Shown here piece by piece: positions 14,622 through 63,319 of a stretch of 64,000 nt of DNA. The notes below the pieces were generated by a model that was given only the letters and a program-made list of their open reading frames with translations, was not told the origin of the DNA and made no database searches. This stretch comes from Oikopleura dioica (taxonomy: Eukaryota; Animalia; Chordata), in the NCBI GenBank assembly GCA_907165135.1, contig OU015567.1:6944001-7008000 (forward strand). Reading direction: 5' to 3'. Positions within the stretch are counted from its first letter, which is position 1; each line of letters opens with the position of its first letter. The translations under genes and the position numbers were made by a program.

Positions 14622-16624
<2,003 letters not shown>

Positions 16625-18875: not shown

Positions 18876-18999
18876 TCATTTTTTGTTGATTTCTGTTTGC
18901 CTACTTTTTATCAAACTGATTTTTTGTAAATATAATTTTCCTAATTCAGTGTTTTTGAGATTTCTTTATTTACGGAGCTCCAACATTGAATCTGTTAGA

Positions 19000-20706
19000 A
19001 TGAAACGGATTAAAGAGCTGTACGAGCTATTCGAAAAGAATGTAAATATACCAAAGAGGGAAGAGACACTAAACGCGATATCAAGTCATTCCAAAAGAGA
19101 CGAGCTTGCCAGACTTGTATTTGAAAGAGCTGATGGAAATGTTTTTGCCTTCGCTAAGAATCAGCTTCTTCCAGCAAATGATGCTGATGAATACGGCCCA
19201 TTTGATCATCTTCTCGAAGCGGGTCATTGTATGAGGATCCTCAAAATGATGGCTAAAGAAGATTATGTAATCAACTTGTTGAAGGACGATTTCCGGGCTG
19301 AACACGGTCGTGAGCCGAACAGCTTGTCGGATATTGCCAGAATTTTTGCCGAGCGAGAATATATCACGAAAGAATCATCCCTTGCAAAGCGGAGAGCTGT
19401 TTTTCAAACCGATGGGACAGCAAAAATTGGAAGTACTTGGATCATAACCCTTTTGGGTATTGAAGGTGTCGACGACGACGATGATAGATGGCAAGAATCC
19501 GTGTACGTTTATAAGATTTTACGAAAGGAAGGAATCAGTTTGGAGAAGGTGAATTTTCATAGATCGTCCCTGGATATCAATATCTGGTACTTTGACGAAA
19601 CGTTTCTCTTTGAGCCGTTTCTCATTATGTTGAATTCTGAAGAGAACACATATTATGTTTTAAATTTACTTGAACCAAGTGAGCCGCCAAGGGCCATAAG
19701 AATGGGAGGCCGACCATGGTTTATGTTGCAGAAAGATGACATCGGTCAATATCGATACGACAGTGATGTCCGTCTTAATGGCGAGCTTCGAGAAGCTGTC
19801 CTCTTCCCGCTCATCTACGTTCAAGATGATAACAGCTTTTGTATCGAATGTGCTCAAATCAGTTCATCATCGATCGAAATTCTTTGGAAAGAAACCATTA
19901 TTGTACCTGAAATGTGCTTTGAAAAAAGGCTTTACCTGTTGGACAATGATAACTTGATCCTTCATATCATCTTAGAAGTTAACGAAGACCATGGAACCGC
20001 CAATGGATTACTTGCTTTTCATATCATTCTTTCGAGAAGAAAAATAATTCGCTACGATTTTCCGCAGATATCGGGGTATGTTGACTTTGGAATTATCAAG
20101 GAGCGCCTCGCAGTGATGATTTGGAATCCCAACAATTGGGAAGACAGCGATGACGACGACAGTGATATAGAATTCAGCGACGCAGAAAACAAAGATGCAG
20201 ACGATAGCGATGGAGACGATAGCGATGGAGACGACAGCGACGAAGACAATGACAAGAACGAGAATGGCGATCCTGGCTTCACCACCTTTTGTTGGTTGTC
20301 AGAAGAGAAAGATTTCGAAATTGTTTGTTTCTTCGAGCTTTTATTCAAGCAGGATATTAGCATACATGGAGGGATGATAGTACAAGACAACCTGCTGAAC
20401 AAAACGCGCAAAAAATTTTGCACAAAACGCCTGATTAATCAACTGGGCGAACTAAAAATGGATCAGACCCCCGAACCTTTTTCGACCAAAAAAATAAATG
20501 GTGTCGCAGTTAGAAGACCCTTTGTTCAGTTAGGTAATATCTATGAGATTTTGTCCACAATTAACGTCAATTTAGAAAGGCTTTTCTCACGAGAATGTTC
20601 AATAAAGAGGGCGAAGAAAGAAATTTGCGTGAAAGATCGGTCAAAAATAGGATGCGTTACCTATCAACCAAGAAAAGAAGCATTCTCCATCGAAATATTC
20701 ATCTAG
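19000..20706 (+). CDS. Intronless hypothetical protein (about 570 aa) with Asp-rich insert
   Basis: Uninterrupted ORF. Likely ATG at 19000 after a TTAG acceptor. DSDGDD repeats near 20150-20260. No family recognised. Confidence 0.7.
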   Translation: MKRIKELYELFEKNVNIPKREETLNAISSHSKRDELARLVFERADGNVFAFAKNQLLPANDADEYGPFDHLLEAGHCMRILKMMAKEDYVINLLKDDFRAEHGREPNSLSDIARIFAEREYITKESSLAKRRAVFQTDGTAKIGSTWIITLLGIEGVDDDDDRWQESVYVYKILRKEGISLEKVNFHRSSLDINIWYFDETFLFEPFLIMLNSEENTYYVLNLLEPSEPPRAIRMGGRPWFMLQKDDIGQYRYDSDVRLNGELREAVLFPLIYVQDDNSFCIECAQISSSSIEILWKETIIVPEMCFEKRLYLLDNDNLILHIILEVNEDHGTANGLLAFHIILSRRKIIRYDFPQISGYVDFGIIKERLAVMIWNPNNWEDSDDDDSDIEFSDAENKDADDSDGDDSDGDDSDEDNDKNENGDPGFTTFCWLSEEKDFEIVCFFELLFKQDISIHGGMIVQDNLLNKTRKKFCTKRLINQLGELKMDQTPEPFSTKKINGVAVRRPFVQLGNIYEILSTINVNLERLFSRECSIKRAKKEICVKDRSKIGCVTYQPRKEAFSIEIFI

Positions 20707-20975: not shown

Positions 20976-23900
20976 ATGGCTCGATCTGTAGACGCGTACG
21001 CAGAGTACGAAAGAATCGTCGGCGGTGACGACAAAGGAAAGACAGTGTTTTTTTTAAATTGCACAAAATCTGGGGAGTCCTTTATCTCCGAGCAGGATCG
21101 CCGTAGAAAGTCCCCAAAGGGCTTAAAATCTAGCTCAGGGTCTAATCTAGTGCGTAAGGGGGTTTATAAATTCTAGAGCCCACGTGATATTACGTAATAT
21201 TACGTAATATAGGAAATATCATGATTTTTTCCAGTAAGTAAGGTTACAGATATCAAAAAGTATACCTATCGACGTCATTTTTCATCCACTTTCTCGACTG
21301 AGGTCACTTGAGGTCACGTGACCCCAAATGACCTCGATATAAATAAAAAACTTCCTAATAATGAGTGATATATATTTTTGAATAATTTTGAAAGATGATT
21401 GACATTCACACTTGAAAGAGGTCATTTGGGGTCACATGACCTCAGGTGACCCCAAGTTTTTTTTTTAAACGAAACATTATGAGTCATACATCATTTTAAA
21501 GCCCTTTTAAAGCCGTTTCAGCCCCGTCCCTTGATTTTTAAATTTAAGGGGCTTGACGGCCCTTCGGGCCGTTTCAGCCCCGTCCCTTGATTTTTAAATT
21601 TAAGGGGCTTGACGGCCCTTCGGGCCGTTTCAGCCCCGTCCCTTGATTTTTAAATTTAAGGGGCTTGACGGCCCTTCGGGCCGTTTCAGCCCCGTCCCTT
21701 GATTTTTAAATTTAAGGGGCTTGACGGCCCTTCGGGCCGTTTCAGCCCCGTCCCTTGATTTTTAAATTTAAGGGGCTTGACGGCCCTTCGGGCCGTTTCA
21801 GCCCCGTCCCTTGATTTTAAATTTAAGGGCTTGACGGCCCTTCGGGCCGTTTCAGCCCCGTCCCTTGATTTTAAATTTAAGGGGCTTGACGGCCCTTCGG
21901 GCCGTTTCAGCCCCGTCCCTTGATTTTTAAATTTAAGGGGCTTGACGGCCCTTCGGGCCGTTTCAGCCCCGTCCCTTGATTTTAAATTTAAGGGGCTTGA
22001 CGGCCCTTCGGGCCGTTTCAGCCCCGTCCCTTGATTTTTAAATTTAAGGGGCTTGACGGCCCTTCGGGCCGTTTCAGCCCCGTCCCTTGATTTTAAATTT
22101 AAGGGGCTTGACGGCCCTTCGGGCCGTTTCAGCCCCGTCCCTTGATTTTAAATTTAAGGGGCTTGACGGCCCTTCGGGCCGTTTCAGCCCCGTCCCTTGA
22201 TTTTTAAATTTAAGGGGCTTGACGGCCCTTCGGGCCGTTTCAGCCCCGTCCCTTGATTTTTAAATTTAAGGGGCTTGACGGCCCTTCGGGCCGTTTCAGC
22301 CCCGTCCCTTGATTTTTAAATTTAAGGGGCTTGACGGCCCTTCGGGCCGTTTCAGCCCCGTCCCTTGATTTTTAAATTTAAGGGGCTTGACGGCCCTTCG
22401 GGCCGTTTCAGCCCCGTCCCTTGATTTTTAAATTTAAGGGGCTTGACGGCCCTTCGGGCCGTTTCAGCCCCGTCCCTTGATTTTAAATTTAAGGGGCTTG
22501 ACGGCCCTTCGGGCCGTTTCAGCCCCGTCCCTTGATTTTTAAATTTAAGGGGCTTGACGGCCCTTCGGGCCGTTTCAGCCCCGTCCCTTGATTTTTAAAT
22601 TTAAGGGGCTTGACGGCCCTTCGGGCCGTTTCAGCCCCGTCCCTTGATTTTAAATTTAAGGGGCTTGACGGCCCTTCGGGCCGTTTCAGCCCCGTCCCTT
22701 GATTTTTAAATTTAAGGGGCTTGACGGCCCTTCGGGCCGTTTCAGCCCCGTCCCTTGATTTTTAAATTTAAGGGGCTTGACGGCCCTTCGGGCCGTTTCA
22801 GCCCCGTCCCTTGATTTTTAAATTTAAGGGCTTGACGGCCCTTCGGGCCGTTTCAGCCCCGTCCCTTGATTTTAAATTTAAGGGGCTTGACGGCCCTTCG
22901 GGCCGTTTCAGCCCCGTCCCTTGATTTTAAATTTAAGGGGCTTGACGGCCCTTCGGGCCGTTTCAGCCCCGTCCCTTGATTTTTAAATTTAAGGGGCTTG
23001 ACGGCCCTTCGGGCCGTTTCAGCCCCGTCCCTTGATTTTTAAATTTAAGGGGCTTGACGGCCCTTCGGGCCGTTTCAGCCCCGTCCCTTGATTTTAAATT
23101 TAAGGGGCTTGACGGCCCTTCGGGCCGTTTCAGCCCCGTCCCTTGATTTTAAATTTAAGGGGCTTGACGGCCCTTCGGGCCGTTTCAGCCCCGTCCCTTG
23201 ATTTTTAAATTTAAGGGGCTTGACGGCCCTTCGGGCCGTTTCAGCCCCGTCCCTTGATTTTTAAATTTAAGGGGCTTGACGGCCCTTCGGGCCGTTTCAG
23301 CCCCGTCCCTTGATTTTTAAATTTAAGGGGCTTGACAAAGGCTGGGAAGCCTGAGTTGATCATTCTCAGTTGCGTCCCCAACCCCACCCACCTCCATCTG
23401 ATGTTAAAATTTATTTAGACCTCATTTTTAGTTTTCTTATGGTTTTTATTAAATTTTTTAAGTAAAGTTTACAGTCGTCAAATACGTGTATTCTTCCCTC
23501 ATTCTTTCTTCCAGTGAGGTTTCCCACAGAGTCCTCCGGGTCCTCCGCACCAATTTTAGAGAAGGTGAACTTCGAGCGTCGATTACGCAATGATTTAGTA
23601 ATTTCTAGAGCTAGGCAAACCCCTTACGCACTAGATTAGACCCTTAGCTACATTTTCCACCCTTTGGCATTTCTGTAGCATTACTGTAGCGTGAGAATAA
23701 GCGCTCCCCAAGAAGCCCGTTTTTTGTGCAATTTAAAAAAAACACTGTCAAAGCTCTTCTCAGATGCAGAATTCGACGCTTATAAAAAACGTGTTACGCC
23801 GCTGCGCATCAACAATCGGATGTTCGTTTCGTGGCAAAATGAAAATGGGATGGATTGCAAACTCATCGGTCCAGAGACCAAATGCCTCTGTCAGTGCCGG

Positions 23901-24454
23901 TACAAACGACACCAGACGGATGTGACGGAGATAAATGAAAAGACGAAGAAGATTCCTTGCGCCGAGTATGTTCAGATTTTCGGAATTCATTTTCATTCAC
24001 TTTATAGCTGCGGGTGTAAAGGATTTACATATGTCCCGGCAAATGGTCCCCGACAGCTCCGATGCGGGCGATGCAAGTGCGAAGCAAGTGTTCATAACGC
24101 GAAAGTGACGCCTTTTAAGTGCCTAAAGGTGTTTTGGAAATATACAATTATTCAATTATGTAATATATTTTTGAATATAAATATGTTAAAAATGAATTCT
24201 AGTGCTCGAAATGCCCTGGTTTCATGACTGCTGCTCGTTGCTCTTGCGGAAAACTCGCGCCAGCTCACCGTTTGGTTGTGGAATCGAAAGAAGAACGCGC
24301 TGCTGCAGGAAAACCGATCGGAATTGATTGCATTTACAAAGCGATGGGTGGAATCACCGGCTTCTCAAGTCTTCTCGACGGAGCGCAGAGGCTTGATCCA
24401 AGTGGACTTGGCGACTTTCCTTCGATAGCCGCTGCATATAAAGCTCTAGAGTAG
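20976..24454 (+). CDS. FAM221A: FAM221A-like protein
   Basis: VDAYAEYERIVGGDD / LFSDAEFDAYKKRVTPLRINNRMFVSW..GMDCKLIGPETKCLC, ESKEERAAAGKPIG..YKAMGGITGFSSL. Intron 1 is 21045-23753. Confidence 0.9.
21101..23676. mobile_element. Non-autonomous TIR/foldback element inside FAM221A intron 1
   Basis: Left AAAATCTAGCTCAGGGTCTAATCTAGTGCGTAAGGGGGTTT (21125-21165) is the near reverse complement of 23617-23656. There is an internal inverted pair GAGGTCA(C)GTGACCCCAAATGACCTC at about 21310 and about 21418. No transposase. Confidence 0.7.
21512..23336. repeat. 56-bp tandem repeat, about 32-33 copies, self-complementary unit
   Basis: Unit GCCGTTTCAGCCCCGTCCCTTGATTTTTAAATTTAAGGGGCTTGACGGCCCTTCGG. Copies differ only in T4/T5 and G3/G4 homopolymers. 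No spacers. Confidence 0.98.
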
Positions 24455-27152: not shown

Positions 27153-28528
27153 ATGGATTTTCCAAAGACTGAAAAGCTGAAACTTGAACTTTTTCCAAAA
27201 GGGCTTCATTTTTCTATTTCTGAACTTCTTCTCGAGTTAGTTAATGAGCAGGAGGAGTTTTCCAGGGCATTGAAAAGGGTTGAGCTTCTTCGTGATGTCG
27301 GTTAGTTACTGTTTTTTTTAACAGGCAAAGCATTTCTTAGCGCACGATCAACTGAACGCTGGAAAATACTCTGACGTTGACGTTAAATGGCGGCGCGCTT
27401 ACTATCTCTTCTCATTTGTGGAGGCGTTTTGCAAATTTCGCATGAATCAGAGCTCCGTAGAAATTTTGAAGAGCTGCGATGAAGGGCTTCTAATGGGAGC
27501 ACCTGTTGACGGATTCAGTATACATGACATTATCGCAGCGACGCGTCCAGCCTACAGCTCTGACGACAAGCCGTCAATAAACTGCTCAATTGAGGAGCAA
27601 AACGCATTGCCAGCTTTGAAGAACCCTATTACGCGTTTGTCGCGGCTACCGACTTTAGAGGAATGGATAAATATCCGGATGGCGGGAAAACCAGTTCTTA
27701 TCAGTCAAGGCGCCTCCTCCTGGCCGGCGGTGGAAAAGTGGAGCTTTGAGTTTCTCTGGGAAAAGCTCAAAGGACGCACAGTGCCGATTGAAGAAGGCGC
27801 TAAATATACAGACGAAGATTGGGGACAAAGACTCAGAACTTTCGACGATTTTCTTCGCTCGATTTTCAAAAAGAAGGAGGAAAAGGGGATCAAAAGCTAT
27901 TTGGCTCAGTAACGGGTTTTGAATTAATCTGCAGCCTGTAGCTTGTTGAACAGAGTACCCTTCTTTCGAACTTGATACTTGACTTTCTTTTGCTTTTCTT
28001 TTTGCGGTCGAAACAGGGAACCCTTAGTGCAGCATCCGCTTTTGGAACAGGTGCCCGAATTGTATGATGACATTGAATTTCCTGACTACTGTTTTACCAA
28101 TTCCTCCGACGACCCTGAAGGTATCCAATTTAAACAGCCTTTCAAATCGTTTGTTCAAGTGAATGCATGGATAGGCCCAGCCGGGACAGTTTCAAGCTTG
28201 CACACGGACAACAAGTTCAATTTGTTCGCCCAAATTCGCGGAAAGAAATACTTTGTTCTCGCCGACCCAAAATACTCTTCCTTGATACCTACTGTCAGCA
28301 AGGTAATGTTCAATTCAAGCAAGTTGGAAGTCGAGGACAAAGAGGTTTGGGACAATTCTGGGGTGGTCTTTGAAGATTGCATTGTCCAAGGTATTTTTGA
28401 CACCCTTGAAAGAGTCTTTTGAAGATGATTCTATTTTAGAAGGAGATCTTCTGTATATACCAAAGCTGTATTGGCACTATGTTCGCTCATTGACACCGTC
28501 AATAAGTCTGTCGATTTGGTTTGAATAA
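27153..28528 (+). CDS. KDM8: JmjC protein JMJD5/KDM8
   Basis: CDEGLLMGAP, KPVLI..WPAVEKWS, RTVPIEEGAKYTDEDWGQRL, YLAQHPLLEQVPEL, NAWIGPAGTVSSLHTD, GDLLYIPKLYWHYVRSLTPSISLSIWF*. Confidence 0.94.
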
Positions 28529-47887: not shown

Positions 47888-48744
47888 TATAACTGCACTT
47901 TGCTCGACAAGGCTCATTAACATGGGCACTCGATTCGGTAGCATGAACTTTTTTGCTTACTAGATTTTTTTGCCCTCCAAGCCAAACTTGATGATTTTGC
48001 CAGCTTGATAAATCATCATATCCTTTTAGTTCTTCTCAAGTACCCTTTTGGAACAGCAGATGGTACTTATCGTCCCAACTTCTATTAAGAGAGTGACACC
48101 CTTAATTTATCTGACCAAAATTAAGTTTAATGTTGCGTAGTATTGAAAAGCATCTGTTTATAATACAGTTCATTTTCAAGAAACCCAAAATACAACCAAT
48201 TGCAGGGTTCAATTTCGATTTTTTTCTAAGTTCATTTCTTCAACTTCGACTTATTATTTATCGAGAAAGGTAAATTTCTTAAAACGTGAGTGCAGAAATA
48301 AGCTATTGCCGCGTAAAATGGGTTTATACCTGGTTTTATGTAAGTCAAGCGTGAAGGCCGAAATCAAGTCGATTCGTAAGATTAAAATTACGGCATAAGC
48401 AAGGCTTTGATACGCTGCAACTTAAAACCACCAGATGCGCTATTTATCTTAATCCTTCAATTTTTGCCAAATTTGACAAAATTGAAAATTGTTGATGGCA
48501 TAATTATTAATTTTGATCGAATGAAAAATTAATTGAAAAATTAATAAAAAGCTGGAAGTCGGGGCCAACTTCCCTGCGCGGAAAATAAAAACACGAATGG
48601 GATTTTTTCCAAAATCGCAAAACTCGAATGGTAGTTGCCCGGAAATCGTTTTGCGCGAATGGCACTTGCACGAAAACCTCATTCGCGCAAAAACTTCCGC
48701 GCAAAACGATTTCCGCACAAAAAAACTCCATTTTTCTCGGATTA

Positions 48745-48965
48745 TTTTTTCTCGAATTTTATATTGCACGCGGAGCGTGCCATTCCCAACTGGCCCACCT
48801 TCCCAACTAACCAACCCTCCCCAACTTACTTTCTCTCGAATTTTATATTGCACGCGGAGCGTGCCATTCCCAACTGGCCCACCTTCCCAACTAACCAACC
48901 CTTCCCAACTTATTTCCCCTCGAATAATATAGGGCACGCGGAGCGTGCCATTCCCAACTGGCCAG
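48745..48965. repeat. 84-bp tandem repeat x3 containing hairpin GCACGC-GGA-GCGTGC
   Basis: Hairpin starts at 48766, 48850 and 48934. An isolated copy occurs at 57843. Confidence 0.9.
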
Positions 48966-48977
48966 CCATTTTTTACT

Positions 48978-49312
48978 CACGAAATGGTTGGTAGCTGGGG
49001 GTGGGATGGGGGAAATTTTTTGGTCGCCCTGTTGGACTTTTTTGGTGAAAGCGTCCCTAGGAAATGGATTTTTTGCGGAATTTATTTTTGTACCCACGAA
49101 ATGGTTAGGATGCAACGGAGTTGGGGGCGGGTTGGGGGAAATTTTTGGTCCTCCTGTTGGACTTTTTCGGTGAAAGCGCCCCTAGAAAACGGATTTCTCG
49201 CGGAATCTATTTTTGTACCCACGAAATAGCTAGGATGCAACGGAGTTGGGGGCGGGTTGGGGAATTTTTTGGTCGCCCTGTTGGACTTTTTCGGTGAAAT
49301 CGCCCCTAGAAA
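48978..49312. repeat. About 120-bp tandem repeat x3, G-rich
   Basis: CACGAAAT...GGGGGCGGGTTGGGG...CTGTTGGACTTTTT...CCCTAG starting at 48978, 49095 and 49220. Confidence 0.88.
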
Positions 49313-49862
49313 ACATTTTTTGCTCGAAATTGTGGTAACTGCATTTTATTAGCAAGAATTAAGATTTCGTTTTATGAATAAATAGCACGAGAATTTGATG
49401 ATATTTAAATATTCGGATCATATTGCTCGCAGATTTAATTTCTAAGCCTCGTTTTTGGCAGAAACGGGGTTTAGGTACGATTTTCCTTTTGGCAGAAGGC
49501 GAATCGTGGCTTATTTGATCTCCGAGCAATATGTTTGAATATTTTTGTTAAATTTGGTGTCTTTCTCGCAAAAATCTCGTGTACTGTTTTTGTCGCTCTT
49601 TTTGCGGCCAATCGTGTGTGGCAGCCTCATTATTCCGCCTACGCACGCTCTCAATTATATTTCCCCCTTCGGCGTTTCGAGGTATTTCTTAAAACCGGTT
49701 TCTAGAAGTGTTTGTTTTTATATTCTAATTACTCTTTTTTCCATCGAATTGGTTGTTTTTATATATAAATTACTTTCTAGAACAGTGGTTTATATCTTGG
49801 ATTTGTTATAAAAAAAATCAGTTCTTATTTTCCAAATACAGACAAGGCCGAAAGTTGGAAAA

Positions 49863-52295: not shown

Positions 52296-55200
52296 ATGCT
52301 CCCTGTAGATGATCGTGCTGATCAAGACAATGACAACGACGACGAGTGGGAGTCTGATGACGACGGTTTTGCTCAGGTAAAGTTTTGCAAGGTGTTTATT
52401 TTTATCCTGTCTAATTTAGGGGGAAAAATCATTTATCCCTGGCGGAGGAATCAAGGGACTGTATGAAAAAAGCTTGAGTAAAGTAAAGGATGCCGGTCGA
52501 AAAGTATGTGGCGTTCTCAAACGTCCAACCAAGCGTCCAACCAAGCGTCCAGGTGTAGCCAGCCAACATTCTCGCATGTCATCTATTCGAGTAAGTACTT
52601 GGTTATACGCTCTCTTTAATTCCTTAATATTAAGTCGACGCGTCATAAGAAACATCGTGGCAATCAAGAAAATGTTCAACTGGCCGCGGACAGAACTGGA
52701 CTTGGAATTAGCTCAACTTCTCCCCCTACTCGAGAGCAATCTTCCAGACGCCGGTCAATACTCAAAGTTCCATCGCATCAACCCACGAAACTCACCCGGT
52801 CTTCCGCGCGCGATCATTGTCAATCTGGTTCCTCTCAAGCTGTTTCCCAATCAGCTTGTTTTGATGAAGACTTAACCCAAAACGGATCTGAGGGTATGGA
52901 TGTTATGGAGAAATTAGCCTTTTCGACGGATGTACCGAGCGCTCAAGAACAGTGCGAGAGCGCGGTCGCGATGTTCAATTCTGAAGAAAAAGAATACGAT
53001 TTCGACGATGGCTATAGGGCGTTTCAAGACAGAGTGGAAAAAGCCGCGGCTAACCTCAATTATCAAAGCGACGATACTGACACTGACGAAGGCGAACATC
53101 TTCAAGTGCGACCTTTTGGCTCTCCTGGATCCGACGAGCTTGACAATTCTCCTGGCCAACGCGTCAGTAAGGGGACTACTGCTGGTACGTCCGGGTTGAA
53201 TGTGCCTGTCCCTTCTGCAAAAAAGAAAAAGAAAAAACCTGTAGCGTCCATGCCTATTCAAAATTTCTTCAATGAGAGTACGCCCGCTGAATGTACGATT
53301 CCTGATGCGACCGAATTTGTGAGCGAGCTTCCAGCTAATGATATTCACATTCCTGCGACGGCGCTCTGTCATAGACGATTCGAATACATCTCGTCTCGTG
53401 GTAATCCTTCTTTCTTCATGGCTCACTATGTAAAAAAAACACCGAGAACCTTATCTCACCGGCCGCGGCGAGGTCTAAATCATGATGTGATTGCTGTTGG
53501 ACTCCCTTTGCCGGATGACGACGAAGAAGTTATATTTGCTGAATACCGACTCGACAGTTGTTCCATGCGGTATGATTAAATAAATAGATATTTTACTAAT
53601 AAGCCATTTAGTAATGGTGTTGATAAAGCAAGCTTCTACTTCCGTTGCAATGTGAGAGACTGTCAAGGCCGTATCATTTATTATGGGCCGCAGCACTTGA
53701 TTGAACCAGCTAATCGACATAACAAGTACAGATTGAAAAAAAGTGCTGTCGACGTGTTCTGGCAGCAGATGAGTATTGTGCCGCCTGATCAGGACGGATC
53801 AAATCACAAATGGGGCCCTAAAGAAACTATTCGTCACAGTTGTGGCTGTTTTTAGATCGCAGAGATGGCTGAAAGAGAGGTGGAACGTAGAATTATGGTA
53901 ACATAATCTGTTTTATTCGTTTTTGTTGATAAATCTGCTTTAGACTGCTGTGGATGAGGTCGGCCTAACCATTCAAAACTCAGTAATCGACACGATTTCG
54001 AAGAATGTGAAAGAACGCTACCATGGCTGGTCGATGCCTAACGAGAAGCATTATTACAACGCCCTTTTGCAACGAAAGAAGAACACTGTGCGCCGTAAGA
54101 GGGATAAAACTTACCTTGTCAAGGACGATCGTTGTAAGCTGGTGCCGGCACCCTTGGCCAGACTGCGATATCACGCGGCTTTCGAGGTCGACGATAATGA
54201 TCGATGGGCGAGTTATCAGTGTGAACACTTTCTTATAGGTGGGTGCCTTTTCTCTTTTTATTTTGCGAGCGGAGCGAGCCTCGTTTGGTTATTTTCTATG
54301 TATGTATTTTAGTGGTCGACTGGTTGCTCCTTGAGAAGTTGCCTTTGCGTAGCTTCTTGCGAATGATGGCTGATGGAACTTTTTACGTGTGCGGGGGTTG
54401 GAGGCAGTTGGTCACGATTATGATGGGCTTGAACACCGGTGTTTCCGAGAAGATGGTCAATGTTGCGGGCATTTATTTGCTGACTAAAGAGCAGAAGCAT
54501 TATGCTGCTGCGTTTACGAAGTTCTTTGATATGGTGCAAGAGCGCTTTGATCTCGTGCTGCAGTATGTTCTGTTGTCGACTGACATGGAGCCTGGTCTCT
54601 ATGGCGGGTAAGTTTTATTATTTGTTCCTTCATTATGGTCACTTATCTAGAATAGAGCAAGCGATTGAGAAAAGACGGATCAAGGCACGAACAACGGTAT
54701 GTGGTGTTCATGCTGAGCGTGCGATATACAAGGCGATCAAGAAGATTATCCCGTTTAAGATTATTCCAACTCCTGTCAAGATGACCACGTTTTTCATCAA
54801 GCATATGGTATTTTAATTGTTGATTAGTAGTTAATTATTTTTATCGTAGATGTTTCTCCGTCCTGATTTGATTTACGGCTCCATGCTGTTCTATTTCATC
54901 ACGATTGCGAAGATCCCTCGAATTGGCGAAAGACTTGCTCGATTTATCAAAGATTTTACGCTCAAAATCTTGCGCCACACATGGGGCTTGCGGTACAACT
55001 ATTGGCGGACGATGAAGCTTGGAAACTGTACGGGCATTCCTGTGTTTCTGAACACGAATCCTGCCGAGGCACAAAACAGTAGTTTAAATCACCGCTACAG
55101 AATTTTTCATGGAAGGGTAATATTCATCGTTTATCAATTTCTCTCGCATTTTATCTTTTATTGTGTGAAAAGTATTTACCGATCTTTTTAGGCGCAACGC

Positions 55201-58200
55201 AAGTTTGAGCGTGATTTGGAAATATTCAATGGCCACATGAATGATGTTGGCAAGGAAGTGGTTGCTGGCAATTACTACGAGCCATGGAAAAAATATGAGA
55301 ATGATGAGAGGAAGGAGGATCATCTTCGCCGAATCATGGCTTTATGCGATTCTTATCAAAAGGTCCCCGCCGGAGAGCCTGTGCCCAAGGAGTTTTTTCT
55401 GCAGCTAATGTCTCTCATCTGCAATGAGTTTATGGTAAATTTTGTCTTCATTTACTATTATTTTAATTTTTATAGGTCCGTGAGGAGTCGAATCGGTGGG
55501 CGAAGCCAACAGCTGATTTTTTGCGTCGGGAGAGATTATTAAGAGCAATGGAACAATCCGATGGACTCACGGCCGACACCGATCTCATCCACTTGTCCCC
55601 TGACGAAGTCGCCGATTTGACGAATGAACTCAAGTATGCTGGTGTCGACATGTCTGAGCCAGAAGTTGCGATTTTGACAGAATTAGGCATGGATGACGTG
55701 AATTTTGACGAGTTGGGACAGGGCTCAGCGGGCAGCAATCTAATGGATATCAGGGATATGCCTGCCTTGAATGATGATGATCCCGCCGACGACCAGCTCG
55801 ATAAAGTAATCTCGGAAACAAGCATGTTAACCCGAGCTACTGGCGGAAGCGATCAATTTGCTAGTACAAATCCCACAGCGCCCTCCACGTCAAGTGCGGA
55901 AAATAGCGCCGCGCTCTCGGCTTCATCAACCAATCAACCTGCGGGATCGGTGGTGTCTTCAAACGCGAGCGAAAATTGCGCCCTCTTGGATCGTCCTGAG
56001 CAAACTTCTACAATTGCTTCAACTTCCGCGGCTAAGTCTGTTCAAACACGTGGTCGAAAGAAGGATGATCGTCAAGAAACCATTGATCGTATTTTTGATT
56101 CTGAGGAAGACTCAACTGATAGTGCACATGCGAACGCTACTTCATCTGACGAAGACGTGTGTTTCACTGAGCGTGCGTATAGCAAGAAGCAACCAAAAGC
56201 TGGACCAGCTAGCGTCATGCGCGAGTCTATGCGAGTAAGGCCTGTTGTGCCTATGCCCGAGGCGAGCGAAGGACCATCTACGCGTTCGAGAGCGAAGAAG
56301 CCCACTAGACGTTCGCCGTCGAATCTCCTTACGCCGCCTGTTGGCAAAATGCCACGCCGTGGTTGCGCGAAACAACAGCATGTTGGACCTAACCGAAAGC
56401 ACAACTTCAAGTTGTTTAAGGAGATGGGTCTTCAAGCTGCTAAAGATAAGATGCTGAATGATGCTCGTAAGCTTCGTGAGAAGGAACCAGATGTAAATCT
56501 TGACGATTTTCATGCAGTTGTCGACCGAAATCGCAAAAAGACTCCTGAAATGAGCAAGGAAACTGCGGCAAAGCATCACAAGGCCGAAACAACGGCGAAA
56601 AAAAAGACGGCTGAAGAAACCCTCGAGGCGGAACTTGTTGAAAAGGGACTGTTTGTGCGTTCAGGTAGAAAAAAGGGCAGCAAAAAGCAGAATAATGATG
56701 CCAACAACGACATAATGGATCCTGGTCCGTCCGATCAGTCAAATTCTACGTCGAATACCGTGAAGGAACCCTCGCGAACAAAAGACATTCAGGTGTGAAA
56801 TGCTTGAATATTTTCTTAACTTTCTTCTCAAACTTATTCTCATTAAGGCGGCGTCGATGAATGCGAGCGCCAACCAACAACCTCGCAGCCGTGGTAAGAA
56901 GAAAAACGCGTCGGACGTCCTCTCAGACGAGAATGGTAACTTTGTCCAAGCCAGTGGCGAAGCACTTCCTCAGCCAAATTCACTACAGGTTGATACTTGT
57001 TTCCGATTCTCAGAGGTTTAATAGTGTCTTAGGCGGCGTCAAACAAAACGAAAGCGAAAAAAACACCTAGCACTCGCAGGAGGAAGAATACTAAGTCAAA
57101 GGACGATAACGCTGATTCGACTTCGGCCCGCTCTATGGAATATTCCCAAGCAAAGGCACATAAGGTTTGAATTTTCTCTAATTATAATAAATAATGTCTA
57201 AGATGGTGGCTTCCGAAAAAAACACTCAAAAACGAGTCCGAACTCAAAGCAAAAAAGTGAATTTCACGGAGGGCGACGGTGAAACGGCAAAAATTCTCCA
57301 GGTTGTCATTGCAATTCGTGATTATTTTTTTGACAGTGTTCAGGCGAAGGCAGACAAGGCAAGCGCCCAGAAATCATCAATTGGTCGTCGCACGAAAGAA
57401 TCGACCGGTGAAAATCTGCTAAGTGCTCAGAGCAAGAAAAACAACCCGCTCAAATCTGTTGTCAATAAGTCAGTTCAGGCTGGAGATGGTCGGCGAATAA
57501 TTCCTTCGGTTTAGATTAGTTTTGTTTACTTATAAATAATATGTTTTAGAAAAAAAACATTTGTACCGAAGAAAATGGCGAAGATCAACCGACGGATAAA
57601 GAAACTGCTAAGAGTAGTGAAAAGGCTAGTAAAACCACCGCGAAACACGTGAGTCCGAAGGAATCAGTTGCTGATACTCGGCAGATTGAGCAGCAACTCG
57701 CAAATCTCGGTCTCCCTGGCTATTCCGAAAAAAATGCCGACGACGGAAAGGTAGTTTTTCAAGCGTTTGCTACCAACTCGCAATCTGAAGAACAGTTTTT
57801 AATGCTATACTCACCTTTTGATTATTACCTAATGACTATAAAGCACGCGGAGCGTGCCGCATTACTCTATTTTTATACTTGACTAATAAATATGTAAGAC
57901 GCCGCCACCTCTGCCTACTTCTACTGATGCTACTGTAATCAACCGGCCAAAGCTCTCATCGGTTCCTACTCAGGTTTGTGACTTTTTGGGGGCTTCGTTA
58001 ATAATTCTTCTAGCCTTCGACTGCCGAAAATGGCAAGGCAACGCTTCAAGCGTCTGTTACCAGCTCTCCATCTCCAGAACAGGTTTGTTAACTTATTTTA
58101 ATCTAGTGGCATTCTTAATCATATCAAAATATACGGACTGTTCCGCTTTGTCTTTTTTTTCGGTAGTTGGCTAATTGCTATGAATAGATGCCGCCACCGC

Positions 58201-58331
58201 TGACAAATTCTACCGACGCCTCTATTATCAGTCAGCAAACATCCTCACCGGCTCTTCTCAAGACAAGCAAGAAATCTTCCCCGGAGTCACTTCCACGAAG
58301 GTCCGCGCGTGTCAAAGAACAGAAAAAATAA
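52296..58331 (+). mobile_element. Mutator-like (MULE) DDE transposase gene, about 19 exons, with FLYWCH-like finger and long disordered tail
   Basis: MMADGTFY (D, 54372), STDMEPG (D, 54582), CGVH (MULE CxxH, about 54700) and NTNPAEAQN (E, 55066). N-terminal YFRCNVRDC...RHSC. In-frame TAG at 53853. Confidence 0.9.
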
Positions 58332-58479
58332 TGAACTTTCCCTTTTTAATTCTTCGCCTTTAAAAAACTGCTCGTTAACTTTACATCTCTTAAAATCTTT
58401 ATAATGCTTTCTTTATAATAACTATGCTTTATAAAGGTCTTACTTATCTCATTTTAGTGCTGGCGAGTATACTGCGGCG

Positions 58480-59037
58480 ATGATTGATGAATTCATCGGC
58501 TATTGTGCAACCAATCGGTTAATACGGCCTCGAAAGAAATCATACATCAAGATTCTTCGCTTCGACATCTCATCGGAGGATGATCTACGCTTCATGTTCA
58601 GACAAAATTTCTTTGGTGGATATGTGATTGTTCCATTGGATAGTATGAAGTCCGTCGTTCTTGCTATTGTCTGGTCTCACAAGCAAGACCTTCGTCTAGA
58701 TAAAACGACCCGATGCTGGTCTCCTCGCGGGAAATATTTTCTTGGCACCGTTGAGATGTTCTGCAATTTTGTAACACGATTCATCCACGGTACGTCTATC
58801 TTGTTTTTTTTGATTGATGGATTTCTATTTCGTTCTTATTTTTAGCTGTCCGGATCTTTGGCCGACATAAGTCTCCTGTATACTGTGACATCGTCCACTG
58901 GTTGGACCAGTGCCACTCGATAAGAAGATATCCTCGTCAGTGGCCGCTGTCATCTTATCCATTTATTGGGAAACTTCCGGACATGGATGGTCACACTCTT
59001 AATATAACTGATCCAATCACTTACTACTACCTCTAAT
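58480..59037 (+). CDS. Hypothetical protein (orphan) between transposase and clamp genes
   Basis: Two exons MIDEFIGYC...FVTRFIH / AVRIFGRHK...YYYL*, in phase. Confidence 0.55.
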
Positions 59038-59133: not shown

Positions 59134-60222
59134 ATGTTTGAAGGGACCTACAATTGCGCGGAGACTCTTAAGCGTATCGTTGACGCAGTGCTTGTTCTCG
59201 TTCCTCATGTCTATGTTGAGATTTCGTTGAGCGGGATTTCCGTACAAACTATGGATAGCGCTCAGATTTGTTTGATCCAGGTCGTTCTCCGAAGTGACTC
59301 TTTTGTCGGCTTCCGCATTGACAATCCCATGACGCTCGGAGGTACTGCTATATCATTTGTAATTTTTGATAGTTTTTAGTGAATTTCGATTATCTCAGCA
59401 AAATCCTGAAATGCGCCAAGGCTTCTGAAGTTGTGTCACTTGCTTGTCCTGGCATTGATGGCAAACTCTCAATTACGCTCAAAGATGAGGTATAATTTTT
59501 CTTGTTCCTTCGAATGCTGCAATATTTAAGGCTACCACAGCTTGCACCGAGTTTGAGTGTCCATTGATATACATCGATAGTGAGCAAATTGCGATCGAAA
59601 ATCAAGAATTCACGTAAGTTTTGGCTTGCCTATTCGTTTTATTTTTCTAAACAATAGCTGTTCCATCTCGATGCCTGCTCAAGAATTTCACCGGATCTGC
59701 AACGACTTTCAGAACATCGGTGAAATAATGACAATCAAGATAAGTCCATCGAAGGTTGAGCTTAGAGCCAAGGGCATGTACGGGACTGTCAGCAAGACAC
59801 TATCGACCTCGGCGCAATCTTCGGGCATGCCTCATTCTATTGACATCAGCACAAGCGAAACTATTGAGCAAAGCTTCAGCCTTAGGTACTGTTATCTTCT
59901 ATGCCTGTCACAATTTATTAAGCAAGCGGAGCTTGCTCTTTAAAATTTGAAAAATCGTTGTGACAATCCCTTAACACTGATTTCAGGTATCTTTGCATGT
60001 TCATAAAGGCTACTTGCCTTTCTTCGCGTGTCAATCTTCAGCTCGGTGATGGAACTCCACTTATCGTGACTTACGAAGTTCAGAACGTTGGCTCCATTAA
60101 GTACTTTCTAGCTTCTCAGGTCCGGGTCGTCTTCTATCTCTTGAATATTGTGAGGTACTCTGTAACTTTAAGTCTATCATATACAGTTTTTAACGACCCT
60201 TGTAAAGAACGATGAAGAGTAA
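59134..60222 (+). CDS. Divergent PCNA-like sliding clamp 1
   Basis: MFEGT..LKRIVDAV, GISVQTMDSAQICLIQVVLRSDSF.GFRIDNPMTLGVN, ISMPAQEFHRICNDFQNIGE, FSLRYL..FIKATCLSSRVNL....PLIVTYEV..VGSIKYFLA. Confidence 0.93.
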
Positions 60223-60332
60223 GTGATGATTGCCATGAGATAAGAGACGATTCGTTTTTTTACCTGCCGTTTTATATTTTGTGTGAACTGTGGTTAAATA
60301 ATAACTCAATTTTATCATTATTTTAATAGCTA

Positions 60333-61360
60333 ATGGGCACTTTTGTCGTTCGGTTCGCACTGACTGATAAGTTTGTGGATATTTTGGATTCAATGAACGA
60401 CTTCTGTGGTCATTGTATCCTGAAGGTAAACTCGTTTGGCCTTTATCTGGATATGGGTTATCCTGGCGAAATGACCGCAGCGCGTCTCTTTATTCGTTCC
60501 AGCTCGTTCGATCGTTTCACAATCACACGGCCATTCACTTTCGGAGGTAACGCTTCAATCTGTTGCATTCTTTTTAACTTTATTAGTGGATTTGTGCGTT
60601 GTACAAGAATTTCAACCTTGGCTTGGTGGTGATCTTTGCCTTACAATCGATGATCTTCAACAGTTGACCCTTACCCACTCTCATCCAGTAAGTTGGCCAC
60701 TCATGAAACTATGTAACGATGTCTAGCGCGATGGCGTGCTGCGTTCTCGAGTCCTTACCAGTTCCGCAAATATGGATCGTTTACGGAGGTTCAGTGATGT
60801 TGCTGATCGGCATCAAATTAATTACTGGTAATTATACTTATAATTTTATTCAAATTGAAACTGCACGACACTTATGATAATTAAGCTGTGAGGTTGATAT
60901 TCCAACGTACGGATATCGCCGGATGTGTGAGCAATTTGCAGACATTTCGCAGCGCGTCCGAATTCAAGTCGACAGCGATTGTGCACGGTTTAGTGTCGGT
61001 GAAGGACGTTGTTATGTTAGTCTCGTGCCGACGACTTCCAACTGCAAGATCGTCGTCAAATGCGATACTCCGGTTGATAGCTATTATCGCGTAGAGTAAG
61101 TCAACAAGCGTGTGCCCGCTCATATGTCCTTTAGACACTTGACGCTCTGCCTCAACGCTGCTGGTTTATCGGACAGAGTCACTCTCAAGGACAGTTCTGC
61201 TTATAAATATATTTATTGGGGAATTGTTGTGAAGTTTTTTCTTTTTTTACATTTGATTGCAGAGCTTTTTCAGTTGAGCACTGGGCCTGTGATGTCGATT
61301 CTCTACCGTATAAAGCACATTGGCTACGTTTTCTATTCTGTTATGTCAGATTCTATGTGA
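60333..61360 (+). CDS. Highly divergent PCNA-like sliding clamp 2
   Basis: FVDILDSMNDFC, RLFIRSSSFDRFTITRPFTFGV, VDIPTYGYRRMCEQFADISQRVRI, LNAAGLSDRVTL, LYRIKHIGYVFY. Intron positions match clamp 1. Confidence 0.78.
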
Positions 61361-61429
61361 TCTCTGTCAAAACATGAGCTTATTTTTGTTAGGCTATTTA
61401 ATTGCCGAAGGGTTTGTTCAGGCTTGGAA

Positions 61430-62429
61430 ATGGGCGACTCGTTGATGTTCGAATGCACCTTTCTTACGCCAAAATATATCAAGTTGGCAACCGAAGTGAT
61501 CGCGGATTTTATGCGTGATGGTATTTGGGAAGTTACTCAAAATGGGCTCTCCCTTCAGTGCAAAGATGATTCTCGCGTTACTCTCCTGCAGATAGTATTT
61601 CGACGTGGCGCTTTTTCATCATTTCACACAACGAAAGACGGGCTTCTGCTAGGAGGTACTAAGATATTGAATATTATTTTTTCCTATTTGGTTAAGTGAA
61701 GGTGAAAGGAATGCACGAATTCCTTAAATGTGTTCCGCCTGACCATAGTATTCAATTTTCCTGCGATGAGCACGACTACGATAACTTGATGATGAAAGGG
61801 CAGAATAAGGTTTGTGTTCATCTTTTGTATTCACATGCTTACTGTTTCTTAAAAGGAAGGGCGATCTGTCAAGTGTCTTATGCATCTGGTTGATCTTGAG
61901 ATCGAAAATTTGCTTGTTCCACCGGTTGTTTACAGGTATTGCTCAAATATTTTTATAAGAATTCAACTCTTTTAAATTTCAGTTCAACTGTGCGAATGCC
62001 GTCATTGGAATTTAAACGCATCATCACGAAACTTGTCCTTACTTCTGATACCGCAGAAATCTCATGCGTGCCTGGGTCGGTGACGATGTTCGCAGTAAAG
62101 AAAGACAAAAAAATGGGTGATAAAACTTCTAGGGTGAATATCGTTGAAGTTTCTGACCCTCTCCGGCCACAAAATAATATCTCTATCGATGTATCATGCC
62201 CTTTCAAGGATACTTACACTCTCAGGTGAGTAAAACTCAAAAGATTGACATGATTCGCTTGCCAGAAAATAACTTGAATGTTAGGTATTTGAAGAAGATC
62301 GCCAAGACGCAGGGAACGTCGCCGATGGTGAAGCTTAGTTTCGAAGACGGCGTTCCGCTAATGATTGAATACGAAATCGAGACTTTTGGCGTAGCGCGAT
62401 TTTTTCTTGCGCCGTTGATTCAAAACTGA
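61430..62429 (+). CDS. Divergent PCNA-like sliding clamp 3
   Basis: MFEC, GLSLQCKDDSRVTLLQI, LVDLEIENLLVP..YSSTVRMPSLEFKRII, YTLRYLKKIAK..SPMVKLSF..GVPLMIEYEIETFGVARFFLAPLI*. Confidence 0.93.
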
Positions 62430-62642
62430 TTTCTGTGACCATGTTTTCCTTATTATTTTCAACTTATTTTGACTACTTACTTTTATTTTTACTATTTTTA
62501 CTAACTGCCTTCGTTTCTTTAAAACACTATCTTTAAAGTATACTGCTTACTTGTTCCAACCAAATAACGCTACTCTGTCGCGAAGCGTTCTCTGCTGCTT
62601 TCTGATCTAACAAAGAGTGTTCAGAAATCGGTAGCTGAGTGA

Positions 62643-63319
62643 ATGAGCGATTACAAGAGATTCGTCCACAACTTGAAATGTACCCTCAATTGTGTAGTTT
62701 GCAGAGACGCCAGTCAAACTGCAAACCTCTACAGCTGCTGTGAGTGCAAAGTCATAATCTGTGGAGTTTGCATTGATGTGATGTCTGACGAAACCCGTCG
62801 CGACAGAGTGAAATGCCCACAGTGTAATTATTTTTTGGCTAAGGTTTTGGACAAATACGTTTTTTGAAGTAACAGCTCATTTAGGGCAGTTTTATCCATC
62901 TTCCTTGGGTTAACGCTGCTCTTCAGGATGTTCTCGGTACATGATAATTAATTGATCATTTTATTTATTTCTTTTTAGCCCTCGACGACCATTGCAGTCT
63001 TCAAGAAGCCACCATTTCAAAGTTGCAGGCGTCGATTGCCAATCTGGAAGAGGAAAAGAACGCCGAGCGTGCCGCAAAGTCGCACCAAAAAGCGCCGAAA
63101 TTCAAGGATGAAAATCAAGAAGACGCTCTTCGAGAAGACAAAGTAACGCCTCAAAAACGAAAATGGTATGTTAAGAAAGCTTATTCATATTGCTCCTCAG
63201 ATCTGGCATTATTTAGGCTGGCTATAAGCGGAGTTCAGTCAATCAAGACAATCTACAAGTCAACGCCTTTCATACCGAAAAAGACAAACTTAAAGGGTGA
63301 CAAACACGATTCTAGCTGA
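62643..63319 (+). CDS. Variant RING-finger plus coiled-coil protein (putative E3 ligase)
   Basis: CVVC-x11-CCEC-x4-CGVC-x13-CPQC, followed by the heptad-like QEATISKLQASIANLEEEK. Confidence 0.7.

What the first reader, a model, noticed from the sequence alone, without database searches (positions are those of the whole stretch)
59134..62429. Three tandem, mutually divergent PCNA paralogs: possible heterotrimeric clamp lacking K164
The three proteins keep the clamp fold signatures but differ strongly from one another. By hand alignment to human VVISCAK164DGVKF, the K164 position is Pro (MTIKISPSKVEL), Ser (VRIQVDSDCARF) and Pro (AEISCVPGSVTM). Established: K164 is the RAD6/RAD18 ubiquitination and SUMO site, and heterotrimeric clamps exist (Sulfolobus PCNA1-3, the 9-1-1 complex). 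Inference: three subunits could form a new heterotrimer immune to host K164 signalling, with different partners on each face.
Basis: partly seen in the sequence, partly recalled or inferred. Interest (0 to 1): 0.86.

Follow-up and report, generated by a model that had tools for sequence, protein, structure and literature searches.

The report
Three divergent tunicate PCNA gene copies
The region holds three very divergent, intron-bearing copies of the DNA sliding-clamp gene PCNA, head to tail on chromosome 2 of the tunicate Oikopleura dioica and not in a virus; all three lack lysine K164, the residue through which cells switch PCNA to damage tolerance, but whether they form a mixed ring is untested.

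Summary
Window 59134-62429 (+) carries three PCNA-like genes, and the K164 column reads Pro, Ser, Pro.

They are not continuous ORFs. Each gene has 5-6 exons split by GT..AG introns of 38-101 nt, at the same four positions and phases in all three.

The window is Oikopleura dioica (Okinawa assembly) chromosome 2, OU015567.1:6944001-7008000.

- Gene 1 aligns without gaps to human PCNA 1-255 (E 2e-46, about 37% identity to a canonical PCNA).
- Gene 3 is weaker (about 29%).
- Gene 2 (about 22%) is recognisable only by profile methods.
- The copies are 20-23% identical to each other.

None has a stop or frameshift: 0 stops in the coding frames against 10-20 in the other frames. They are therefore maintained genes, not relics.

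Genes 1 and 3 keep the partner (PIP) pocket. Gene 1 also keeps most DNA-facing basic residues. Gene 2 has lost both.

A canonical Od-PCNA exists at another locus. No orthologue outside this assembly and no expression evidence could be obtained.

A heterotrimer is plausible (three genes, 69-213 nt apart, in an operon-rich species, with unequal retention of features) but unproven. The public gene model is a chimera of these genes and a neighbour.

The parts
59134..60222 (+). PCNA paralogue 1 (g1), the least diverged copy. Exons: 59134-59341, 59380-59489, 59531-59613, 59658-59885, 59987-60119. The 3' end is uncertain: either read-on to TGA at 60213-60215, or a short last exon ending at TAA 60220-60222.
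   Evidence: Exon model with GT..AG introns of 38, 41, 44 and 101 nt, phases 1, 0, 2, 2. Pfam PCNA_N and PCNA_C on the exons. Residues 1-255 of the public model P0001 equal these exons and align without gaps to human PCNA 1-255, E 1.8e-46. No stop or frameshift.
60333..61360 (+). PCNA paralogue 2 (g2), the most diverged copy. Exons: 60333-60546, 60587-60687, 60727-60827, 60886-61095, 61135-61193, 61263-61360. The last intron (61194-61262, 69 nt, in frame) is optional.
   Evidence: Exon model, same four intron phases as g1 and g3. hhalign to a PCNA alignment: exon 4 E 1.2e-5, exon 1 E 8.8e-4. Own PCNA profile: E 1.5e-4 and 5.6e-3 among 2858 six-frame pieces. Exons 2 and 3 have no detectable similarity. 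No stop or frameshift.
61430..62429 (+). PCNA paralogue 3 (g3). Exons: 61430-61655, 61697-61809, 61856-61935, 61983-62225, 62285-62429. A second ATG at 61445 matches PCNA Met1.
   Evidence: Exon model with introns of 41, 46, 47 and 59 nt, phases 1, 0, 2, 2. Pfam PCNA_N 8.8e-8; PCNA_C 8.7e-7 and 2.6e-4. PDB alignment. No stop or frameshift.
59746..59748 (+). g1 codon at the K164 column: CCA, Pro
   Evidence: Ungapped alignments to human and yeast PCNA; codon read.
60974..60976 (+). g2 codon at the K164 column: AGC, Ser
   Evidence: BLASTP to canonical-type PCNA P0160 and hhalign; codon read.
62071..62073 (+). g3 codon at the K164 column: CCT, Pro
   Evidence: HMMER alignment to PDB chain 7ep8_A, ungapped from the MPxxEF motif; BLASTP; codon read.
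60223..60332 (+). Spacer g1-g2. It is 110-213 nt depending on g1's true 3' end. An AG acceptor-like site lies 3 nt before the g2 ATG.
   Evidence: The trans-splice reading is inference.
61361..61429 (+). Spacer g2-g3, 69 nt, free of stops in g3's frame. An AG acceptor-like site lies 8 nt before the g3 ATG.
   Evidence: The conventional operon cut-off in O. dioica is 60 nt (PMC7986045).

Best explanation
SHOWN:
- These are three old, lineage-specific tandem duplicates of the cellular PCNA gene on chromosome 2 of the tunicate Oikopleura dioica.
- They share one exon-intron plan.
- They have diverged to about 20% identity, yet each keeps an unbroken reading frame and canonical splice sites. They have therefore been kept as coding genes.
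- All three have replaced Lys164.

INFERRED:
- They are made as three separate proteins from a tightly spaced, co-oriented and possibly polycistronic (SL trans-spliced) array.
- They serve as alternative sliding-clamp subunits beside the canonical Od-PCNA encoded elsewhere.
- Without K164 they cannot receive RAD6-RAD18 mono-ubiquitin or SUMO at that site. A ring built from them would recruit partners through its PIP pockets without the usual damage-tolerance switch.
- The retained features differ by copy. g1 keeps most DNA-facing basic residues and the PIP pocket. g3 keeps the PIP pocket and C-terminus. g2 keeps neither. This fits a mixed g1-g2-g3 ring, with g2 as a mainly structural third subunit, better than three independent homotrimers.
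- A role in one of O. dioica's variant cell cycles (endocycles, coenocystic oogenesis) is a guess by analogy with its other cell-cycle paralogue sets.
For: Identity and host: a search with g1 exon 1 returned P0001 = CAG5111607.1, O. dioica OKI2018_I69 chr2 g5896. Locus L001 is identical to the window over 14,867 nt.

PCNA kinship. Among solved structures, g1's best single-copy match is human PCNA (161.8 bits), ahead of plant (142-144) and yeast (about 102). This fits vertical animal descent.

Common origin: the introns fall at the same profile columns and phases in all three.

Maintenance: 0 stops in the coding frames against 10-20 in each other frame; 0 of 2000 shuffles had all exons open.

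Age: 20-23% mutual identity and no DNA repeats between copies.

Feature retention: conserved basic columns kept in g1 7 of 11, g3 5 of 12, g2 1 of 8. PIP-pocket columns (40, 47, 126, 128, 234, 250-253 in human numbering) are kept in g1 and g3 and lost in g2.

Canonical gene elsewhere: the Od-PCNA primers published in PMC3034685 encode SHVSLVQ and LVVAYEI and do not match the window.

Spacing: 69-213 nt between genes, with AG acceptor-like sites 3-8 nt before each ATG, in a species with about 1,765 predicted operons (PMC7986045).

Precedent for specialised cell-cycle paralogues in O. dioica: CDK1, cyclin B, INCENP and Aurora.
Against: - No transcript, protein or expression evidence could be reached.
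- No orthologue was found in any other data set, so conservation and dN/dS are unknown.
- No assembly could be modelled.
- g2 exons 2-3 show no detectable PCNA similarity.
- The g2-g3 spacer (69 nt) is just above the 60-nt operon cut-off, and the g1-g2 spacer is longer.
- Lys at column 164 is present in only 18 of 36 diverse reference PCNAs, so its loss alone does not mark a special function.
- g1 has Lys166 nearby.
- Duplicated cell-cycle genes in this species are known to specialise by time and place of expression, not by hetero-oligomerisation.
Confidence: 0.45

Rival explanations
1. Independent specialised clamps. Each paralogue forms its own homotrimer, or mixes with canonical Od-PCNA. 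The three have sub-functionalised by stage or tissue, as O. dioica's CDK1, cyclin B, INCENP and Aurora paralogues have. Their tandem position simply reflects how they arose.
For: Tandem duplication is the plain origin: shared intron plan. g1 and g3 each keep a largely intact PIP pocket and C-terminus, so each could work alone. Paralogue specialisation by expression is documented in this species. Each copy is as close or closer to canonical PCNA (37, 22 and 29%) than to its neighbours (20-23%).
Against: g2 has lost 7 of 8 assessable conserved basic columns and the PIP-pocket residues. That makes a g2 homotrimer a poor DNA clamp. The spacing of 69-213 nt suggests co-expression.
Confidence: 0.3
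2. Partly non-clamp or decaying. At least g2, and possibly others, no longer works as a DNA clamp. It is either on the way to loss or has become something else, for example a regulator or decoy for PCNA partners.
For: g2 fails Pfam thresholds. Its exons 2-3 are unrecognisable. It finds no solved structure by sequence. No orthologue or separate protein record exists for any of the three.
Against: All frames are open and every splice site is canonical, despite divergence near saturation. Exon lengths and phases are preserved in g2.
Confidence: 0.15
3. One gene, one chain. The array encodes a single fused multi-PCNA polypeptide, as the public annotation (798 aa) suggests.
For: P0001 joins g1, part of g2, most of g3 and the next gene. 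The g2 stop is followed by an open frame into g3. The g2 ATG is in frame with an acceptor 3 nt upstream.
Against: The model skips g2 exons 1-3 and g3 exon 5, and runs on into an unrelated zinc-finger gene. Each unit starts with its own ATG at PCNA position 1, and g2 and g3 end with a stop where PCNA homology ends. Only one contig carries this product. A direct join would leave almost no linker between rings' subunits. The engineered single-chain yeast trimer 3k4x has about 9-10 extra residues between units.
Confidence: 0.03
4. Viral or virus-derived clamp genes that evade host K164 signalling.
For: Many large DNA viruses encode PCNA (general knowledge). The locus sits near other replication genes: primase small and large subunits.
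Against: Four to five spliceosomal introns per gene at shared positions. The position is on a 16-Mb chromosome among cellular genes: FAM221, a JmjC/cupin gene, and primase subunits that look canonical. Among solved structures the best single-copy match is human PCNA. G+C is even across the window.
Confidence: 0.01

Closest known systems
Canonical eukaryotic PCNA (human 1AXC, yeast 1PLQ; O. dioica Od-PCNA GSOIDT00012375001)
   Same: Two-domain PCNA_N + PCNA_C plan and about 255-268 codons. g1 is collinear with human PCNA 1-255 without a gap. PIP-pocket residues are kept in g1 and g3.
   Different: Identity to canonical PCNA is only 37, 22 and 29%. K164 is replaced by Pro, Ser, Pro. Part (g1, g3) or most (g2) of the conserved DNA-facing basic residues are lost. 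There are three distinct genes instead of one.
Crenarchaeal heterotrimeric PCNA1-PCNA2-PCNA3 (Sulfolobus, Aeropyrum, Metallosphaera; PMC1636371, PMC4894655, PMC13224785)
   Same: Three mutually divergent PCNA paralogues in one genome. In the archaeal clamp, subunits differ in which partners they bind.
   Different: These genes are of animal descent, not archaeal. They are tandem and intron-bearing. 1:1:1 assembly is not shown here.
Rad9-Hus1-Rad1 (9-1-1) checkpoint clamp
   Same: A eukaryotic heterotrimeric PCNA-fold ring with unequal subunits and no K164-type switch.
   Different: The 9-1-1 subunits are ancient, dispersed families. Here the PCNA models win clearly. Rad1 gives only one sub-threshold hit (19.1 bits against a cut-off of 24) on g1 exon 1, and there are no Rad9 or Hus1 hits.
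Other eukaryotic PCNA duplicates (e.g. Arabidopsis PCNA1/PCNA2, PDB 2zvv/2zvw)
   Same: Extra PCNA genes that arose by duplication within a lineage.
   Different: The Arabidopsis pair score almost equally against one query (142 and 144 bits against P0001; 347 and 344 bits against P0160). That fits two closely similar, near-canonical genes. The Oikopleura trio is 20-23% identical, and all copies lack K164.
O. dioica cell-cycle paralogue sets (CDK1a-e, cyclin B, INCENP, Aurora; bioRxiv 10.1101/817783, PMC6986761, PMC6681789, PMC10733467)
   Same: Lineage-specific multiplication and rapid divergence of core cell-cycle or replication genes in the same species.
   Different: Those sets are experimentally characterised. 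I found no paper that mentions PCNA paralogues in this species.

Membership tests
Eukaryotic PCNA (Pfam PF00705 + PF02747) | N- and C-terminal PCNA domains matched above the curated cut-offs | tested here: met
   g1: 54.1 bits (cut-off 20.3); 42.7 and 40.0 bits (cut-off 23). g3: 32.4 and 29.6 bits. g2 alone does NOT meet it (best 12.7 bits). g2 is placed in the family only by hhalign (E 1.2e-5 and 8.8e-4), the profile search and the shared intron plan.
Eukaryotic PCNA | About 260 residues, collinear with solved PCNAs | tested here: met
   g1 aligns 1-255 to human 1-255 without gaps. All placed exons of g2 and g3 are collinear on the profile. g2 exons 2-3 could not be placed.
Eukaryotic PCNA | Lys164, acceptor of RAD6-RAD18 ubiquitin and of SUMO | tested here: not met
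   Pro, Ser, Pro. Lys is present in every solved eukaryotic PCNA chain whose alignment was shown, but in only 18 of 36 diverse reference PCNAs.
Eukaryotic PCNA | Hydrophobic PIP-box pocket and C-terminal residues | tested here: inconclusive
   Kept largely in g1 (M40, L47, I126, I128, P234, F250, L251, A252) and in g3 (L47, L126, V128, P129, Y133, P234, F-L-A-P). Lost in g2 (G40, A47, V234). Binding itself was not tested.
Eukaryotic PCNA | Basic residues lining the central channel | tested here: inconclusive
   Columns with at least 70% Lys/Arg in 36 PCNAs: g1 keeps 7 of 11, g3 5 of 12, g2 1 of 8 assessable.
Eukaryotic PCNA | Closed trimeric ring loaded by RFC | not testable with these tools
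   No multimer prediction is on hand, and the joined proteins were not built.
Heterotrimeric PCNA (crenarchaeal type) | Three distinct paralogues that assemble 1:1:1 head to tail | not testable with these tools
   Three distinct paralogues are present. Assembly is unknown.
9-1-1 clamp | Membership of the Rad9, Hus1 and Rad1 families | tested here: not met
   Only a sub-threshold Rad1 hit on g1 exon 1 (E 7.4e-4, 19.1 bits against 24), far below PCNA_N. No Rad9 or Hus1 hits at E up to 1.
Viral PCNA / processivity factor | Encoded in a viral genome or a recognisable viral insertion | tested here: not met
   O. dioica chromosome 2, spliceosomal introns, cellular neighbours.
O. dioica SL-resolved operon | Co-oriented genes no more than 60 nt apart, downstream genes SL trans-spliced | tested here: inconclusive
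   Co-oriented. Spacers are 69 nt and 110-213 nt; the cut-off is from PMC7986045. No RNA data, so trans-splicing is untested.

The most novel reading that the evidence does not exclude
A chordate has evolved its own heterotrimeric PCNA-type sliding clamp, convergent with the crenarchaeal PCNA1-2-3 ring and separate from 9-1-1. It would be encoded by an operon-like tandem array next to the primase genes and built from unequal subunits, with one degenerate subunit and two that bind partners. It would be uncoupled from K164 ubiquitin/SUMO control, and might serve the species' endocycles or coenocystic germline.
Probability: 0.2. Interest if true: 0.8.

Novelty: new member of a known kind. Interest (0 to 1): 0.5.

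Why it matters
PCNA is among the most conserved and usually single-copy eukaryotic replication proteins. K164 is the hub of DNA-damage tolerance.

An animal that keeps three extra, extremely diverged, K164-less PCNA genes side by side offers a natural experiment. It shows what a clamp can lose and still be retained. It also bears on whether eukaryotes can evolve PCNA heterotrimers as archaea did.

The finding adds a replication factor to the list of core cell-cycle genes that Oikopleura dioica has multiplied.

On the practical side, the public gene model (CAG5111607.1, 798 aa, named "DNA sliding clamp PCNA") is a chimera of four genes and should not be used as it stands.

Tried and rejected
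1. Reading the region as bacterial-type ORFs: only fragments of 60-105 aa. Replaced by exon models.
2. Rfam on the whole window: nothing.
3. Exact look-up of the 568-aa ORF at 19000-20706: not on record.
4. The search for homologous proteins with g1 exon 4: no candidate. With alignment A5 (two divergent PCNAs plus P0001): 17 hits, none an orthologue. With A6 (P0008 plus the g2 and g3 exons as separate rows): 3 hits, none related to g2 or g3. Because of the tool's length window and word index, these blanks are weak evidence.
5. A metagenome scan with P0001: no relative.
6. PDB search with g2 exon 4: no hit. hhalign of g2 exons 2 and 3: nothing.
7. E2F-type motif TTTSSCGC: 14 sites against 13.8 expected, none informative.
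8. A possible fourth clamp-like gene downstream (L001 17034-18639). One piece scores 11.5 bits on my PCNA profile. Pfam, hhalign and BLASTP give no support. Not claimed.
9. The downstream zinc-finger gene as a RAD18/TRAIP-like ligase: only sub-threshold RING/PHD-type hits. Not claimed.
10. Structure prediction was not run. The only admissible full-length input is the chimeric P0001, which would test nothing.

- Joining the exons into whole proteins for searches, folds or look-ups. All searches were exon by exon, or used the tool-returned P0001.
- A scan of viral contigs, because it could have fetched loci of animal viruses that encode PCNA.
Full report
WHAT IS THERE

Read with the bacterial code, window 59134-62429 gives only ORF fragments of 60-105 aa on the + strand. 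Reading the DNA and translating exon by exon resolves them into three co-oriented genes. They are split by short GT..AG introns of 38-101 nt.

- g1: 59134-59341, 59380-59489, 59531-59613, 59658-59885, 59987-60119. The 3' end is uncertain, somewhere up to 60222.
- g2: 60333-60546, 60587-60687, 60727-60827, 60886-61095, 61135-61193, 61263-61360. The last intron is in frame and optional.
- g3: 61430-61655, 61697-61809, 61856-61935, 61983-62225, 62285-62429.

The first four introns have the same phases (1, 0, 2, 2) in all three genes. They fall at the same columns of a PCNA profile: in codon 70, after about codon 106, in codon 134, and in codon 210 of human numbering.

There are no breaks to count. 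Each gene has 0 in-frame stops and 0 frameshifts, against 10-20 stops in each alternative frame. In 0 of 2000 shuffles were all exons open.

WHOSE GENOME

A full-library HMMER search with g1 exon 1 gave one strong hit, P0001 (798 aa, E 1e-40). This is CAG5111607.1 / UniRef100_A0ABN7T618, "Oidioi.mRNA.OKI2018_I69.chr2.g5896.t1 [Oikopleura dioica]". Its locus is OU015567.1:6993134-7017319, fetched as L001. L001 is identical to the window over the 14,867 nt they share. The window is therefore OU015567.1:6944001-7008000, chromosome 2 of a tunicate.

Other genes in the window are ordinary cellular ones: FAM221, a JmjC/cupin gene, an epimerase fragment and a CENP-B-type DNA-binding domain. G+C is even across the window. 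This is not a virus, a provirus or a human contig.

P0001 is an automatic, chimeric model. It contains all of g1 with some read-on, g2 from exon 4 only, g3 without its last exon, and then the next zinc-finger gene.

ARE THEY PCNA?

g1: Pfam PCNA_N 1.7e-14; PCNA_C 7.9e-11 and 5.1e-10. As residues 1-255 of P0001 it aligns to human PCNA 1-255 with no gap, E 1.8e-46, 161.8 bits. Plant PCNAs score 142-144 bits and yeast about 102. Human is thus the best single-copy match, which fits animal descent.

g3: PCNA_N 8.8e-8; PCNA_C 8.7e-7 and 2.6e-4.

g2 fails Pfam (0.15) and finds no solved structure. Other evidence places it in the family:
- hhalign puts exon 4 on PCNA columns 136-208 (E 1.2e-5, probability 81%).
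- hhalign puts exon 1 on columns 9-69 (E 8.8e-4).
- My own profile of 36 full-length PCNAs finds these two exons at E 1.5e-4 and 5.6e-3 among 2858 six-frame pieces of window plus L001.
- BLASTP of a canonical-type PCNA (P0160) finds g2's C-terminal half at E 2e-5.
- In the window, the best non-self match of each g2 exon is the corresponding g1 exon.

g2 exons 2 and 3 are unrecognisable but keep their length and phase.

Identities over profile-aligned columns:
- g1-g3 23%, g1-g2 22%, g2-g3 20%.
- To P0160: g1 37%, g2 22%, g3 29%.

No DNA repeats link the copies. No fourth PCNA-like gene lies in the window.

THE K164 COLUMN

From the conserved MPxxEF motif to the column, the alignments are ungapped.
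- g1 exon 4 residue 30 = Pro, against human, yeast and other chains.
- g3 exon 4 residue 30 = Pro.
- g2 exon 4 residue 30 = Ser.
- The codons are 59746-59748, 62071-62073 and 60974-60976.

Two caveats apply. g1 has Lys two residues further on. And among my 36 reference PCNAs, which are diverse and mostly from protists and metagenomes, only 18 have Lys at this column.

WHAT EACH COPY HAS KEPT

Of the columns that are Lys/Arg in at least 70% of the references, g1 keeps 7 of 11, g3 5 of 12, and g2 1 of 8 assessable.

The PIP-pocket and C-terminal columns (human 40, 47, 126, 128, 129, 133, 234, 250-253) are largely kept in g1 and g3 and lost in g2. That these columns form the channel lining and the partner pocket is established knowledge from PCNA structures. 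It was not tested here.

A CANONICAL PCNA EXISTS ELSEWHERE

Kugler et al. 2011 (PMC3034685) cloned Od-PCNA (GSOIDT00012375001). Their primers encode SHVSLVQ and LVVAYEI, which are canonical at columns where the trio differ. The primers do not occur in the window even with 3 mismatches.

SETTING

The spacers are 110-213 nt (g1-g2) and 69 nt (g2-g3). An AG acceptor-like site lies 3-8 nt before each ATG.

O. dioica resolves operons with a single spliced leader. Its operons are usually predicted with a 60-nt cut-off (PMC7986045). Polycistronic expression is therefore possible but unproven.

All annotated genes from window 52296 to the end of L001 are on the + strand. Downstream, outside the window, lie a primase small-subunit gene with its catalytic motif region (Pfam 3.7e-7; 52 bits to yeast PriS) and a primase large-subunit gene.

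INTERPRETATION

Shown: these are old tandem duplicates of the cellular PCNA gene, maintained as coding genes, all without K164.

Inferred: they act as alternative clamp subunits. Three points make a mixed ring the reading I favour, at modest confidence:
- There are three genes.
- They are tightly packed and co-oriented.
- They retain features unequally, and g2 looks unfit to be a DNA clamp on its own.

The main rival is three independently specialised clamps, by analogy with the CDK1, cyclin B, INCENP and Aurora paralogue sets of this species. Decay or neofunction of g2, a single fused chain, and a viral origin rank lower, for the reasons given under the rivals.

WHAT COULD NOT BE DONE

No orthologue or separate protein record was found. 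Given the length window and word index of that search, this is weak negative evidence. No expression data or multimer modelling were available.

I found no paper mentioning PCNA paralogues in Oikopleura. Heterotrimeric PCNAs are described only for Crenarchaea in the papers found.

STEPS LEFT OUT, AND SLIPS

- Whole-length statements about g1 rest on the tool-returned public protein P0001.
- I did not scan viral contigs, because that could have fetched loci of animal viruses that encode PCNA.

Noticed in passing
window 59134-63319 (public model CAG5111607.1 = P0001): The public 798-aa gene model named "DNA sliding clamp PCNA" is a chimera. It holds all of g1 with read-on, g2 from exon 4 only, g3 without its last exon, and then the downstream zinc-finger gene.
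   Followed up: yes
window 62643-63319 (+): A small gene 213 nt after g3. It has an N-terminal Cys-rich RING/PHD-like finger (Pfam zf_RING-like 1.5e-4, below threshold; PDB PHD fingers at 0.006-0.25) followed by a charged, probably coiled segment. Its function is unknown, and a link to PCNA is not shown.
   Followed up: partly
L001 about 15100-16560 and 21419-24186 (window-equivalent about 64233-65693 and 70552-73319, outside the window): DNA primase small-subunit and large-subunit genes lie 3-9 kb downstream of the PCNA trio on the same strand. The PriS piece keeps the catalytic motif region (52 bits to yeast PriS). This is a local concentration of replication genes.
   Followed up: partly
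L001 17034-18639 (+), outside the window: One ORF piece (17858-18004) scores 11.5 bits on my PCNA profile at columns 209-246. It is followed by a long acidic, Ser-rich tail, an architecture reminiscent of Rad9. Pfam, hhalign and BLASTP give no support, so it is not claimed.
   Followed up: partly
window 21512-23336: A satellite array of a 56-nt unit, about 33 copies, 98% matches, G+C-rich. It makes the 22-24 kb bin the G+C peak of the window.
   Followed up: no
window 48742-49314: Two adjacent tandem arrays (84-nt and 125-nt units, 2.6 copies each) with G-rich and C-rich runs.
   Followed up: no
window 18883-20706 (+): The longest uninterrupted ORF of the window (607 codons listed, 568 from the first ATG). 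It has an Asp/Ser-rich acidic stretch, no Pfam family, and no exact record in the protein collection.
   Followed up: partly
window 52296-59036 (+): The annotated upstream gene (1684-aa product) ends 98 nt before the g1 ATG. It has no Pfam hit on record or in my scans, and includes a Ser/Thr/Ala-rich 425-codon exon at 55521-56798.
   Followed up: partly
window 59334-59367 and 61648-61681: The only DNA similarity left between copies is 34 nt (71% identity) across the exon 1 / intron 1 junction of g1 and g3.
   Followed up: no
window 11830-12462, 23679-24224, 27322-28419: Ordinary cellular domains: a CENP-B N-terminal DNA-binding domain (possibly transposase-derived), FAM221 (1.9e-31), and a JmjC/cupin KDM8-like gene.
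   Followed up: no
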